In this document: in pieces, positions 8,657-54,485 of the stretch
Numbering within the stretch: the stretch's first letter is position 1
How the letters are laid out: each line of letters starts with the position of its first letter
NCBI RefSeq assembly: GCF_001194135.2
Contig: NC_068981.1
Coordinates: 57,275,121 to 57,339,120 of the forward strand
Direction: 5' to 3'
Source of the DNA: Octopus bimaculoides
Taxonomy: Eukaryota
DNA length: 64,000 bases
The notes under the pieces: model-generated
What the model saw: only the letters and a program-made list of their open reading frames with translations
Database searches by the model: none
What the model was told of the DNA's origin: nothing
Made by a program: the position numbers and the translations under genes

Positions 8657-11600
8657 AAAAGATGCATAGATAGATATATACATATACAAATACACACATA
8701 CATTTGCATGTGTGAACACAACCATGTAATTGTTCTTTTGATTTACATCTGTATTTCTATACTTGCATAGGTTTGATAGGAAGTGAGTCAGTACTTCATG
8801 ACCAGGCTCTGTTCCTGTTGCCACCAATAACATTTGCAAGCACACAAGTACAGAACCTAATATAAACATGACAACACTGCTTTTCCATTAGATAGTGTGT
8901 TGGGTGGGAGCATTCAGAAGTGTTCCAGAATGCCCAAACATGTTAGGCATGCTACAAATGTTCTACACTCCACTCCAATGTCAGTGCAGGATCCAAGCCA
9001 TCATAAAGAGTAAAAAGGAACACAGAAAATATAACTGGTATTTTATGCTTTATATAATATACATATTTTCACATTTTCCAGGAAGCTGATTAGAGCTTGT
9101 GATTTTATTGATGCTTTATTTTTGCTGATAATGCTGAAGGAAGAAGTCAACTGTTATTGTATAACATCACCAACTGGCTTACATAATAACTGGTTTGCTT
9201 ACTGAAATACGTGTTATTTACATGAAGTATAAAATAATTACATTTTCTATGTTCCGTGTGTGTGTCTGTGTGGGTGTGTGTTAGGTAAGCTGGCAGAAGT
9301 ATTTGTACAATGGACAAAATGCTTAGCAGCATTTTTTCCAAATCTTTATGGTCAGAATTTAAATCCTGCCAAAGTCACCTTTGCCTTTCTTCCCTTCAGG
9401 GTTGATAAAATATGTACTAGTTGAACATTAGGAGTGACATATTCAGCTAACCCTCTGTTCCTTTATTGCTGGCCTCATACCAAGATTTGAAACCATATAT
9501 GTATGTGTGTGTGTGTGTGTGTCCTTGTCTTCACATCATGGGATAATAGTTATAAACGAGTGTCACTGTCATTCCAGCTAAGTCCCTCATTTGCTGTTTA
9601 CCTTGAAAATATGTTCAGTCATTTGCTTGGAAACAAATAAGGGCTGGCAACAGGAAGGGGATCTGGCCATAATAAACTCTGTCCAACCATGTAACCATAA
9701 AATATGATAGACAGATATCGTTTAGAAATATATTCTTGAAAGATATCTGATGATGGGACATACTCACGTAAACTATTTTATCTCATTAAACTATAGCAAT
9801 ATGAAAAGTAGACTTAAAGAGAATGCTTTCACATAGCATTTCACAAAGCATGGTAATATTTCTCTTCCGTTACTTTCTAACCACAGTACTTTGGCTACTT
9901 TCTCATCCTGTGATCTTCACACACACACATACATATACAATCACAGGTTTTCCTATCCTCTCAGTGCTGTAGTCAATCTGATTTTCCTGTTGCTCTCAGG
10001 AGAATTCATTTCATATTTCTATACCCCCACCAACTTTATGTTTTGTTTTTTTTTCTGCTTTTGGTTTTGCTCCCACCACACTTTTTCTTACTCCTTTCAT
10101 GTTAATACAGCAGTGTTCATTGACTAGAATTAGGTGTTGCTCTCTGATTAAACACTGATTTTTTTTTGTTGTTGTTGTTTTCATAAAACTAGTGACATAA
10201 ATAAAGATAATAGCAGCAATATTAATGATGATAATATTAATAATATATTTGTTTTATATTTGATTTTGATTTTTCTCACTTTTGACTATCTTGTCAGTTT
10301 TATACTTGTCATCTTTGTGTCATCTGTGTTATTTTATTATCATATATACTATGATATTTATTAATACTATAAACAAAAATATAGAGGTAGCATATTGCCT
10401 TTTATTATATTTGTTATACATTAATTGCCTTGATCTCTGCCACTGCTGCACACTGTACATCACTTTTTTGGTCATTATCTTTCAGATTCATTCTACTTGT
10501 TTAGCAAAACTATGCACTAAAGTCTAAAAATCATAGGTTCCAATCTGTCTCTATTTTTAGCATTATTTTAATATTCAATTAGCGGTAACATCACCATCAT
10601 CAATCAACTACAGTTTCCATTTGCAAGATGACAGATTTGTGGCATAACTCATTGCATCATCAGTGTCTTAAGTTTATCAACAGTCACAACACTATTGAAT
10701 GCCATCAAGATTTTTAAACCATGGTTTTAGAAGTATGTTCACTTTTCATCTTCCCATGGGATAGTTCCCAGATGATCCCTTTACTGATGGCCACCCTTTG
10801 GTGTCACTGATGATACCCAGCAATTTTCAGCCATTCATCTGCTATCTTGATGGTCATATGGAGCATGTTGCCACAGAGTTGTTGTTACTCAGTCATTTTG
10901 TACATCCAGTTGATGTGATTTTAAAAGGCAACCTGGTGCATTCAAGCTGCATTGATTGCATCCTTTATTAATAATGCATAAATACCTATATATTTATGTG
11001 TGTGTCTCTGTGTAAGGAGCATCCACATAGTTGTGCTCTGCCAAATTCTGTTGGTCAACCCAAGGCCATCGTAGAAGGTGACTTGCCCAATGATGTACTC
11101 CAGAGCAAGGCAAAACCCAGAACCATATGGCTGGAAAGCAAACTCCTTTACCTTATTGGTATATCCATGCTTGCACCCATATAGGAGACTGAAATAAAAC
11201 TGAATTATGTACTTTGACTCATTAGATATAAAAATATTAACTTTTTTTCCCACAATGCTTCTATATTTCTTTTAGTTTCTGTAATTGGTGCTTTTTTTCA
11301 CCTCTCACCCTACTCCTTTCTCTAGCACTTTTTCTTGCTATGGTTCAGCAAAATTAAATATACCACATGAACTTATGCAATATAAATGCACACACAAATC
11401 TAGCACTATAAGAATTTGTTGCATGAAAAGAAATACCCACAAATTATTGTTTATAGATTACATACGTAGGTAATATATATTTCATTTCATTTATTTATAC
11501 ACATTTCAAGGTCTGTTTTATTGTTAGTCTTCTCATTGTTAATGTAATTGTTATTGTGGTTATGGTTAACAAGCAGTTTATCATAATATTGCATTAAAAT

Positions 11601-11684
11601 ATTTTTTAAAGTTAATATTCAAATAAAAAAAAAAACATAGGAAAACTGTACAGATGCACCCATTGCCCACTATTGAACCCCGTG

Positions 11685-12172
11685 ACCCCAGAAGGCAGCA
11701 CCCCCTGCCCACCAGAGGGCTATATCACTTATCCACCTGGTGGCTATACCCTCCATCCACCAGAGGGCAGAACCCCCAACTACCAGAAGGCTATACCACC
11801 CAACCACCTGAGGACAGTACTACTCAACCACCAGAAGACAGCACCACTCAGCTTCCAGTAGGCAGTACCACCCAGCCATCAAAGAGGGCTGTACCATTCC
11901 TTCTCGAGTTATGCTAACTCATAAGGGCCAGTTTCATGGTGTATATACTCCCCACCTAGGTGGAACACCGGTCTACTGCAGGATTACTCATTTTTGCCAG
12001 CTGAGTGGACTGGAGTAACATGAATTAAAGTGTTTTGTTCAAAAATACAATGCATTGCCCAGTCCAGGAATCAAAACCACAATATTACAATCATGAGCCC
12101 AACACCCTTAACCACTAAGCCACGCACCTCCACAGCCGTACCACTCACCTGCCAGAGGGCAGTATCACCCAC
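11685..12172 (+). repeat. Degenerate 24-bp tandem array (9 units, plus 1 beyond a SINE); consensus CCACCAGAGGGC-AGTACCACCCAA
   Basis: Unit starts are 11685, 11709, 11733, 11757, 11780, 11804, 11828, 11852, 11876 and 12149. Confidence 0.9.
11899..12133 (-). mobile_element. tRNA-derived SINE (family E) interrupting the 24-bp array
   Basis: The minus strand begins GGAGGTGCGTGGCTTAGTGGTTAAG (A box) and has GGTTTTGATTCC (B box-like). Array-like sequence resumes at 12136. Confidence 0.75.
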
Positions 12173-13704
12173 TTTGAGAATCACTGTTGTAAATTTTCAC
12201 AGCATCAAATTTAATATTCTTTAACCTTCCATTCATTTTACTTCAAATTTTATTATCAAGTGGAACCTAACAGACAATATTTTAGCAATAGTATTAATTC
12301 TGTCTCTAAGTTATGAGTTCAAACCCTGACACTGTCGACATTATGTTCTTTCTTGTCAGATTGTTAAAATAAGTAATATTAGTTTATTGGAGATGATTCA
12401 GTTGTCTATACCCACACACTCTGCTAATATTTTAATGTGTGCTAATTTGCAATCTAGCTCGGGCTGCAAGCTTTGGTATTATTATTCCAAAAGGTTTAGA
12501 TCCATGCAATAATTTATTGCATAACAAACCAGTGAATAAGCCAAGAAAGAGTGTAAAACAAAAGTATGGAGACTAGAATCATACACTCCTAGCTCTATCT
12601 TCTGCCTATTCTTTTGATCATTCACACCTATCTACCCCAAAATTACTACTACTACTACTGCTACTGCTGCTGCTACCACAACCAGCACTACTACCACTAC
12701 TATCACCACCACTATCATTATATGATGATAGTGATGACTTTTCACATCACTACAAATCCATAGTTACTAGGCATTTAATTAACCCCAATGTGTCAATGAT
12801 ACTTATTTTAACCAGTCCTGCAAGAATGAGCATAACATTGATCCTGGTAGGATTTGAACTCAAAACTTAGTGTCAGAACTAAGTGCTAGAAGCTTTTACT
12901 TCTACAACTCAGTAGCACTGCCACCATTTCTATCATTACTACTGCAACTATTTCTATGACAACAATAAACTGAACTACTACTACTACTGTCACCACCACC
13001 ACACCACTACTACTACTACCACCACCATCACTACTACTATTGTTTAATATACAAATAGTGTAGGCCCTTTATAAAATCTTACGTCATATACAATTTGTTT
13101 GTTCTTTAATACAGAAACACATTTTTTTTCCCTTTACAACCTATTGTGTTCTAAAACCACAGGGAATCATTCTTAATAGAGCAGAACAACCTTGTCTCTT
13201 TCTTGTTCCACCACACACACACACATACACACAAACTGCCCCCTCACCCCCCAAAAAATAGTAGACCACTTGGGGCTTTGTGAGTCATGCAAGCTTCAAC
13301 TTTATTACAGGACTATAACACACCATGGGGTGTATTTATAAACTACTGGTACTACTTAGTTTGGTCATTCTTACTGCAGCTGCTGCTAGCATTTCACTGC
13401 AAAGCTAACTTGGCAACTGTTCTCGTGACTTATCTTAATTCAAAACATTCTAGCCGAAAGTTATTTATCATCTGTTGTCTTCATTATTATTATTGAGCTG
13501 GTAGAATCAGTAGAGCATTGGATAAAATACCTTGTAGTATTTCTTCTGACTATTAACGTTCTGAGTTCAATTCCAACTAGCATCAACTTTGCCTTTCATT
13601 TTTTCCAAGATCAATAAAATAAAATACTGGTTAGGTACTGGGGTTGGTTGTATCAACTAGCTCTCTTCCTTTCAAAATTTTTGGCCATGTACCTAAATCA
13701 GAAG

Positions 13705-54054: not shown

Positions 54055-54485
54055 TTTCCATGCTAGCATGGGTTGGACGATTTGACTGAGGACTGGTGAA
54101 CCAGATGGCTACACCAGGCTCCAATCTGATTTGGCAGAGTTTCTACAGCTGGATGCCCTTCCTAATGCCAACTGCTCCGAGAGTGTAGTGGGTGCTTTTA
54201 CGTACCACCGGCACTAGGGCCAGTCAGGTGGTACTGGCAATGACCACACTCAAAATGGTGTTTTTTACGTGCCACCTGCACAGGAGCCAGTCCAGCGGTA
54301 CTGGCAATGACCTCGCTCCAATGTTTTTTCACGTGCCACCGGCACAAGTGCCAGTAAGGCGACGCTGGTAACGATCACGCTCAAATGGTGCTATTTACGT
54401 GCCACTGGCATGGAAGCCAGACAGCTGTTCTGGCAATGATCACGCTCGGATGGTGCTCTTAGCACTCCACTGGCACAGGTGCTAG
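54055..54485 (-). mobile_element. Family C element with an internal array of about 65-bp repeats
   Basis: The tail segment is near-identical to the reverse complement of 27026-27110. It is followed by about 4.5 units of TTTTACGTGCCACCGGCAC...CTGGCAA(T/C)GA(C/T)CACGCTC...ATGGTG (54194-54485). Confidence 0.78.

What the first reader, a model, noticed from the sequence alone, without database searches (positions are those of the whole stretch)
11685..12172. Co-oriented tandem array of CTCF-motif-like 24-mers
Seen: ten units share the core consensus CCACCAGAGGGC, often followed by AG. Units at 11709 and 11757 match it exactly, and 11757 (CCACCAGAGGGCAG) and 12149 (CTGCCAGAGGGCAG) carry the AG extension. 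All units face the same way, in a GC-rich island. A SINE splits the array, so the array is older than that insertion. By hand, core halves deviate less from consensus (18/108) than spacer halves (28/108), which is a weak difference. Known: the CTCF core is CCASYAGRKGGCRS, CTCF is present in bilaterians, and clustered same-orientation sites act as strong loop anchors in vertebrates. Inference: this may be a repeat-built insulator or loop anchor near a developmental zinc-finger gene, and possibly a dispersed family that seeds CTCF clusters in cephalopods. Alternative: a mucin-like coding repeat (PPEGSTTQ, AG at 11652-11653) broken by the 23-bp unit.
Basis: partly seen in the sequence, partly recalled or inferred. 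Interest (0 to 1): 0.75.

Follow-up and report, generated by a model that had tools for sequence, protein, structure and literature searches.

The report
Single-copy minisatellite with CTCF-like units
This is an ordinary, single-copy, untranscribed 24-bp tandem repeat in repeat-rich non-coding DNA of a cephalopod genome; four of its ten units look like the vertebrate CTCF site, but nothing I could test suggests it is selected, dispersed or working as an insulator.

Summary
The sequence observation holds. A 24-bp tandem array runs from about 11685 to 11899. One further unit lies at 12147-12172, behind a 235-bp high-copy SINE-like insert (11900-12134) flanked by an imperfect 12-bp target duplication.

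Three units are marginal (about 1e-5) and three fail, so "ten CTCF units" is too generous.

The functional reading gains nothing from the tests I could run:
- The array is single copy, even at 80% likeness, so it is not a dispersed family.
- It is identical in six samples of the species.
- Two sister species are about 3% diverged over it, the same as over the flanks and the SINE. One of them carries 48 extra bases (two units).
- It has one CpG where 19 are expected.
- Three RNA-seq runs give zero depth on it.
- The "developmental zinc-finger gene" 28 kb away is an ORF inside a repeat with thousands of copies.

The coding alternative fails too. The frame breaks are shared across species, no protein homologue was found, and the third-codon-position excess is not significant (P about 0.07).

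Best reading: a neutral minisatellite whose founder unit happened to resemble a CTCF site. CTCF occupancy was not testable here and remains possible.

The parts
11654..11684 (+). Degenerate leading edge of the C-rich block (decayed unit or units). It begins abruptly after an A/T-rich stretch that ends ...aaaaaaaaaaacataggaaaactgtacag.
   Evidence: Direct repeat D4: 11656-11670 is 87% identical to 11698-11712. Sequence read.
11685..11899 (+). Nine head-to-tail units of a 24-bp minisatellite, with consensus CCACCAGAAGGCAGTACCACCCAA (conceptual peptide PPEGSTTQ). Unit starts are 11685, 11709, 11733, 11757, 11780, 11804, 11828, 11852 and 11876. Unit 11757 is 23 bp. Unit 11876 carries a 2-bp insertion.
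   Evidence: TRF period 24; units in register; single-copy depth and identical contigs in six samples.
11706..11724 (+). Strong CTCF-matrix match (unit 11709): score 17.6, p 4.5e-7.
11754..11772 (+). Best CTCF-matrix match in the window (unit 11757): score 21.6, p 3.4e-8.
11801..11819 (+). CTCF-matrix match (unit 11804): score 14.2, p 2.8e-6. It scores 18.6 with the base carried by the sister species at 11809.
11825..11843 (+). CTCF-matrix match (unit 11828): score 16.2, p 9.8e-7.
11888..11899 (.). Left copy of the target-site duplication (GCTGTACCATTC). It is part of unit 9.
   Evidence: Compared with 12135-12146 (GCCGTACCACTC), 10 of 12 identical.
11900..12134 (-). High-copy SINE-like interspersed repeat inserted into the array. 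Read by eye, it has tRNA-like box A and box B sequences on the minus strand.
   Evidence: Word depth 1e5-1e6 against about 50. Other copies diverge at 11899/11900. Contigs of both sister species run from the array into the insert. ARAGORN and Rfam find no tRNA.
12135..12146 (.). Right copy of the target-site duplication (GCCGTACCACTC).
12147..12172 (+). Tenth and last unit (core CTGCCAGAGGGCAG). It is in register once the insert and one duplication copy are removed. Marginal matrix match, p 1.5e-5.

Best explanation
This is a lineage-restricted, single-locus, non-coding minisatellite with no detectable function.

Origin (inferred): one C-rich seed of about 24 bp was amplified by replication slippage or unequal exchange to about ten units. 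The units then decayed by point changes and small indels: one unit has 23 bp and one has two extra bases.

History (shown): a SINE-like element inserted into the ninth unit before the present species separated from its sisters. The array has since drifted at the local neutral rate, and two units were gained or lost between species.

CTCF resemblance (inferred): the founder unit happened to read CCACCAGAGGGCAG, and tandem copying multiplied it. Copying also explains why all sites face the same way. The most likely functional consequence is none.

Shown: anatomy, copy number, the shared SINE, the interspecies divergence and length change, and the absence of RNA and of protein relatives.
Inferred: the mode of amplification, neutrality and lack of function.
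For: - Period-24 array with decayed units.
- Single-copy word depth in seven DNA-like runs of the species and in two sister species, also at 80% likeness.
- Six samples carry one identical contig of about 890 nt across 11115-12005.
- Sister species B has 5 substitutions in the 212-nt array part. Sister species C has 7, which is 3.3%. In species C the comparison values are 4.9% and 3.7% in the flanks and 3.7% in the SINE part. The seven changes fall 2-3 in the core and 4-5 in the spacer.
- The species C contig carries 48 extra nt at 11688-11691. The species B alignment breaks at the same point.
- Core versus spacer deviation is not significant.
- RNA depth is 0 over 11671-11837 in three RNA-seq runs. 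No indexed RNA run holds words from the array.
- There is 1 CpG against 19 expected.
- The neighbourhood consists of SINEs, microsatellites and assembly gaps.
- Look-elsewhere estimate: a random 24-mer unit reaches the consensus unit's matrix score with probability 1e-5 (composition-matched shuffles) to 1.4e-4 (50% GC). The window holds 19 arrays of period 10 or more per 62 kb. A genome of a few gigabases should therefore hold a handful of such arrays by chance.
Against: - Within this one window the match is improbable, roughly 2e-4 to 3e-3 given 19 arrays. Four units match at p<3e-6.
- CTCF exists in coleoids, and CTCF-like motifs are reported enriched at squid TAD boundaries (PMC9023564) and detected at loop anchors of three coleoids including an octopus (PMC13652810). 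Occupancy is therefore plausible and was not tested.
- The array shows no length variation in six samples, which is less unstable than a classic hypervariable minisatellite. Contigs do drop rare variants, though.
- The neutrality test has little power, with only 5-7 substitutions.
- In the sister species the two changes inside strong units raise the matrix score, while weak units lose score. That could hint at selection, but the numbers are far too small.
Confidence: 0.65

Rival explanations
1. Functional cluster of CTCF sites. On this reading, octopus CTCF binds the four to seven competent co-oriented units, and the array acts as an insulator or a loop-extrusion barrier born from a tandem repeat.
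For: - Four hits at p 3e-8 to 3e-6 and three near 1e-5, all within about 200 bp. No other hit below 5e-6 occurs in the 64 kb window.
- A unit-level shuffle reaches the consensus score with probability about 1e-5.
- CTCF-like motifs are reported at coleoid boundaries and loop anchors (PMC9023564, PMC13652810).
- The strong units keep or improve their score in the sister species.
Against: - Substitutions are no fewer than in the flanks or the SINE.
- Core positions that CTCF needs (the CC of CCA) are lost in three units.
- Core versus spacer deviation is not significant.
- Unit number changed between species.
- It is not a family.
- In four runs of unknown library type, the signal lies on 11115-11663 and drops about tenfold on the array.
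- No CTCF binding data exist for any cephalopod, as far as the two papers show.
- Same orientation follows automatically from tandem duplication.
Confidence: 0.1
2. Relic of a coding repeat. On this reading, the array began as an exon or gene fragment encoding a Pro/Thr-rich octapeptide repeat (PPEGSTTQ). It later lost its frame and expression. The CTCF likeness would be a by-product of the CCA-CCA-GAG-GGC codons.
For: - The period is a multiple of three.
- One frame reads PPEG[S/Y]TTQ in 8 of 9 units.
- Deviations from consensus by codon position are 8, 14 and 23. pN/pS is 0.57 in that frame against 1.45 and 0.71 in the other two.
- An 87-codon ORF is open across the array.
Against: - The periodicity is not significant (permutation P 0.07), and neither is pN/pS (P 0.12).
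- No protein among 5.8 billion clusters shares even three 5-residue words with the frame-corrected peptide.
- There is no Pfam match.
- There is no paralogous DNA at 80% likeness.
- The sequence upstream of the AG at 11652-11653 is A-rich rather than pyrimidine-rich.
Confidence: 0.15
3. Live coding exon of an unannotated mucin-like gene.
For: ORF 11654-11917 is open in one frame, and an AG lies just upstream.
Against: - RNA depth is 0 in three deep RNA-seq runs, and no indexed RNA run holds the array's words.
- The repeat peptide changes frame at the 23-bp unit and again at unit 9. These breaks are fixed in six samples and no indel was listed there in the sister species.
- A SINE interrupts it.
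- Contigs that cover it run straight on into the SINE, with no splice.
- No homologue was found.
Confidence: 0.03

Closest known systems
Ordinary minisatellites (tandem arrays of 10-100 bp units; VNTRs when copy number varies, as catalogued genome-wide in human, PMC8096271)
   Same: Head-to-tail units of 24 bp in about ten copies. It sits at a single locus, the units have decayed, the strand composition is skewed, and the unit number changed between close species.
   Different: No length variation was seen among six samples of the species. It is therefore a minisatellite but not a demonstrated VNTR.
CTCF-binding tandem repeats of mammals, such as the DXZ4/Dxz4 macrosatellite (PMC3491370, PMC5899087)
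   Same: Tandem copying multiplies one CTCF-like site into a co-oriented cluster. In Dxz4, orientation matters for long-range contacts.
   Different: DXZ4 has kilobase-sized units in tens of copies, proven CTCF occupancy and a proven structural role. Here the units are 24 bp, so adjacent sites would overlap the footprint of a bound CTCF protein (my own knowledge). Only four units are strong matches, and neither binding nor any structural role is shown.
Retrotransposon-borne CTCF site expansions (mammalian B2/SINE waves; recalled from my own knowledge, not checked here)
   Different: Those are dispersed families with thousands of copies. This array is single copy. The SINE inside it carries no hit at p<1e-4.
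Pro/Thr/Ser-rich coding tandem repeats (mucin-type PTS domains)
   Same: Octapeptide periodicity rich in Pro and Thr, with a weak third-position excess.
   Different: The frame is broken, it is not transcribed, and there is no homologue.

Membership tests
Minisatellite / VNTR | Head-to-tail tandem units of about 10-100 bp in several copies | tested here: met
   TRF period 24, 5.3-5.5 copies per row. Ten units in register, counting the decayed ones.
Minisatellite / VNTR | Unit number varies between individuals or close species | tested here: inconclusive
   Between species: the species C contig has 48 nt more, which is two units. Within the species: six samples are identical, but contigs hide rare alleles.
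CTCF site cluster / insulator / loop anchor | Sequence matches the CTCF core motif above chance | tested here: met
   Four units at p 3e-8 to 3e-6, three near 1e-5, three fail. Whether it applies to octopus CTCF is assumed, not shown.
CTCF site cluster / insulator / loop anchor | CTCF protein occupies the site in vivo | not testable with these tools
   No ChIP or CUT&Tag run could be found. A search for runs with ATAC in the library description listed none.
CTCF site cluster / insulator / loop anchor | Open chromatin or a footprint on the motifs | tested here: inconclusive
   Four runs of unknown library type pile up on 11115-11663 (depth 8-31) and drop to 2.4-2.9 on the array. The library type is unknown, so this cannot be read as accessibility.
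CTCF site cluster / insulator / loop anchor | Domain boundary or loop anchor in contact maps | not testable with these tools
   Octopus Micro-C exists (PMC13652810), but the window's genomic coordinates are unknown and no contact maps are available here.
CTCF site cluster / insulator / loop anchor | Purifying selection on motif positions | tested here: not met
   Array divergence is 2.4-3.3%, against 3.1-4.9% in the flanks and 3.7% in the SINE. Of 7 changes, 2-3 are in the core. Within the array, core versus spacer gives P 0.16. Power is low.
Dispersed repeat family that seeds CTCF sites | Many related copies elsewhere in the genome | tested here: not met
   Depth over 11694-11855 equals that of the single contig in every run, also at 80% likeness. 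There are no other copies in the window.
Coding tandem repeat (mucin-like exon) | One uninterrupted reading frame through the repeat peptide | tested here: not met
   The PPEG.. peptide lies in the frame starting at 11655 up to the 23-bp unit at 11757-11779 and in the frame starting at 11654 after it. It is broken again in unit 9 and then by the SINE.
Coding tandem repeat (mucin-like exon) | Transcribed and spliced | tested here: not met
   Depth is 0 in three RNA-seq runs, with about 6% of each run read. No indexed RNA run holds the array's words.
Coding tandem repeat (mucin-like exon) | Protein relatives, or selection at the codon level | tested here: inconclusive
   No homologue and no Pfam match. 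Codon-position deviations are 8, 14 and 23 (P 0.07), and pN/pS is 0.57 (P 0.12).

The most novel reading that the evidence does not exclude
A young, octopus-lineage minisatellite has created four to seven co-oriented consensus CTCF sites that octopus CTCF occupies. That would make it a repeat-born boundary or loop-extrusion barrier in an invertebrate, whose strength changes with unit number between sister species (10 versus 12 units).
Probability: 0.07. Interest if true: 0.55.

Novelty: new member of a known kind. Interest (0 to 1): 0.2.

Why it matters
As it stands it matters little. It is one more minisatellite in a repeat-rich genome.

It does show that motif clusters inside tandem repeats should be scored per founder unit, not per hit. 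They also need a genome-wide correction before they are read as regulatory.

If the minority reading were true, the locus would be convenient for asking whether cephalopod CTCF uses oriented site clusters as vertebrates do. It would offer a natural 10-unit versus 12-unit comparison between sister species.

Tried and rejected
- Coding exon. I translated all three frames, scanned Pfam and searched the frame-corrected peptide against 5.8 billion protein clusters. Nothing was found. RNA depth is 0.
- Dispersed family. I checked depth at 95%, 97% and 80% likeness in eleven runs with DNA-like, even coverage (the tool marks them 'DNA?' or '?'), and ran BLAST and a pattern search within the window. 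The array is single copy.
- Structured RNA or tRNA origin. ARAGORN found none. Rfam gave only chance-level hits, with E 0.39 and 0.83, far below the gathering scores.
- Accessibility. A search for ATAC libraries listed no run. The four runs of unknown type that are enriched next to the array could not be classified.
- Intra-array statistics. Neither the CTCF core versus spacer contrast nor codon periodicity reached significance.
- Polymorphism. The first attempt gave depth 0 over the array. That was an artefact of submitting a stretch shorter than the contig that contains it. Repeating it on 1.7 kb showed identical contigs.
- CpG island or promoter. Rejected, with 1 CpG against 19 expected.
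- Developmental zinc-finger neighbour. Rejected as evidence, because the ORF lies in a high-copy repeat.
- Recombination-hotspot or minisatellite-core motifs. I considered these from memory only and did not test them, so I make no claim.

Full report
**What is there.** The window is draft-quality animal DNA, with about 34% GC, 2062 N and many (TA/TG)n tracts. Public runs labelled with one species hold the region almost word for word, and three other species hold it in part. I did not establish the species independently.

Between an A/T-rich stretch that ends in an A11 run (11625-11636) and another A/T-rich stretch from about 12175 lies a C-rich block. Tandem Repeats Finder calls period-24 arrays at 11709-11835 and 11757-11885. 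The repeat finder puts the copies in register with spacings 24, 23, 24, 24, 24 and 297.

Read in register, the units start at 11685, 11709, 11733, 11757 (23 bp), 11780, 11804, 11828, 11852 and 11876 (2 extra bases), and then 12149. The consensus is CCACCAGAAGGCAGTACCACCCAA.

**The insert.** Positions 11900-12134 have word depths of 1e5-1e6, against about 50 for the flanks. Other genomic copies part from this sequence exactly at 11899/11900. The insert is bracketed by GCTGTACCATTC and GCCGTACCACTC. Removing the insert and one copy of that duplication joins unit 9 to unit 10 in register.

Contigs of two sister species run from the array into the insert, so the insertion predates their split. ARAGORN and Rfam do not recognise a tRNA in it.

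- Units 11709, 11757, 11804 and 11828 score 17.6, 21.6, 14.2 and 16.2, with p 4.5e-7, 3.4e-8, 2.8e-6 and 9.8e-7.
- Units 11685, 11733 and 12149 are marginal, with p 1.2-1.6e-5. Unit 11733 is palindromic and scores better on the minus strand.
- Units 11780, 11852 and 11876 fail, with p 2e-4 or worse. They have lost the CC of the core or carry an indel.
- Elsewhere in 64 kb only two hits reach 1e-5 and none goes below 5e-6. About 1.2 hits at 1e-5 are expected by chance.

So the cluster is real, but it has four good sites, not ten. The hits are also not independent, because they are copies of one founder.

The fair null is per unit. Shuffles of the consensus unit reach its score (20.3) once in 1e5 trials. 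Random 24-mers at 50% GC reach it 1.4 times in 1e4. The window holds 19 arrays of period 10 or more in 62 kb. The match is therefore unlikely for one window, at roughly 1e-3. Across a genome of gigabases, a handful of such arrays is expected by chance.

**Tests that bear on function.**
- Dispersal. Over 11694-11855 the depth equals that of the single contig that spans it in every DNA-like run. This holds at 95%, 97% and 80% likeness. There is no family.
- Stability within the species. Six samples give one identical contig of about 890 nt across 11115-12005.
- Constraint between species. Sister species B differs at 5 positions in the array part and sister species C at 7 of 212 nt (3.3%). In C the left flank differs by 4.9%, the right flank by 3.7% and the SINE part by 3.7%. 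In B the flanks differ by 3.5% and 3.1%.
- Where the changes fall. The seven changes are at 11789 and 11809 (core), 11864 (first base after the core) and 11803, 11824, 11827 and 11851 (spacer). 11809 T>A improves a strong unit. 11789 G>A destroys a weak one. There is no sign of constraint, though power is low.
- Length change between species. The species C contig has 48 more bases between the anchors at 11691 and 11688, which is two units. The species B alignment breaks at the same place.
- Variation within the array. The core deviates from consensus at 18 of 108 positions and the spacer at 27 of 108 (P 0.16-0.18).
- Composition. The array has 57% GC but 1 CpG against 19 expected, so it is not a CpG island.

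**Transcription.** Three RNA-seq runs, with about 6% of each read, give depth 0 over 11671-11837. The depth on the insert comes from other copies of it. None of the indexed RNA runs holds words from the array.

Four runs from one study, of unknown library type, cover 11115-11663 at depth 8-31, the array at 2.4-2.9 and 10379-10969 at 0. The RNA runs show the same faint patch at depth 0.1-0.7. The patch ends at AATAAA followed by the genomic A11 run. I therefore suspect a weak polyadenylated or oligo-dT-primed transcript rather than open chromatin, but I could not settle the library type. Either way the signal is beside the array, not on it.

**The coding alternative.** The unit reads PPEG[S/Y]TTQ. 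The peptide lies in the frame starting at 11655 up to the 23-bp unit and in the frame starting at 11654 after it. It breaks again in unit 9.

Deviations by codon position are 8, 14 and 23. pN/pS is 0.57 in that frame, against 1.45 and 0.71 in the other two. That is suggestive, but column permutation gives P 0.07 and 0.12. A search of 5.8 billion protein clusters with the frame-corrected peptide found no sequence sharing even three 5-residue words. Pfam finds nothing. A live exon is close to excluded. A decayed coding origin stays possible and would explain the CCA-CCA-GAG-GGC core as codons.

**Surroundings.** The "developmental zinc-finger gene" is the ORF at 39990-40532. It has only sub-threshold C2H2 matches, at 16-21 bits against cut-offs of 25-30. 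Its DNA is present at 9e4 to 9e6 word depth, against about 55 for single copy. It is part of a high-copy repeat, not a unique developmental gene. The flanks of the array are other interspersed repeats, triplet arrays and assembly gaps.

**Literature.** CTCF and cohesin genes are present in the squid Euprymna scolopes, and a CTCF-like motif is enriched at its TAD boundaries (PMC9023564). [quoted passage not shown] Neither paper reports CTCF binding data. Tandem repeats that bind CTCF are known in mammals, for example DXZ4/Dxz4 (PMC3491370, PMC5899087).

**Verdict.** Two of its parts, the dispersed family and the developmental zinc-finger neighbour, were tested and not met.

The most likely account, at about 0.65, is a neutral single-locus minisatellite whose founder unit resembled a CTCF site. 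A decayed coding repeat as the origin gets about 0.15. A functional CTCF cluster gets about 0.1. CTCF occupancy, accessibility and contact-map data at the locus would decide.

Noticed in passing
window 11115-11663: Four runs from one study, of unknown library type, cover this single-copy patch at depth 8-31. Neighbouring single-copy DNA is at 0-5 and the array at about 2.5. Three RNA-seq runs show the same faint patch. It ends at AATAAA (11621-11626) followed by a genomic A11 run. It may be a weak polyadenylated or internally primed transcript on the + strand.
   Followed up: partly
It lies in DNA at more than 1000 times single-copy depth, so it is probably transposon-derived.
   Followed up: partly
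window 11688-11691: A sister-species contig carries 48 extra bases here, which is two 24-bp units. A second sister species' alignment breaks at the same point. The letters of the extra units could not be read.
   Followed up: partly
window 12500-13250: A strongly C-skewed stretch (GC skew down to -0.58) holds (TAC)n and (ACC/ACT)n triplet arrays at 12644-12717 and 12974-13039. They are high copy in the genome and present in RNA reads.
   Followed up: no
window 54196-54455: A tandem array with a 64-bp period and about 4 copies (unit begins TTTTACGTGCCACCGGCACAGGAGCCAGTAAAGCGGTACT...). It is the only other array of four or more long units in the window.
   Followed up: no
window 11728-11748: Unit 11733 contains the palindrome CCACCTGGTGG. 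It scores as a CTCF-like site on both strands, and better on the minus strand (p 3.9e-6). It is the one exception to "all units face the same way".
   Followed up: yes
window 11500-12000 (tool behaviour): read laying reported depth 0 over the array when the submitted stretch (501 nt) was shorter than the contig of about 890 nt that contains it. A 1.7-kb stretch restored the signal. Zero depth from contig runs on short stretches should not be read as absence.
   Followed up: yes
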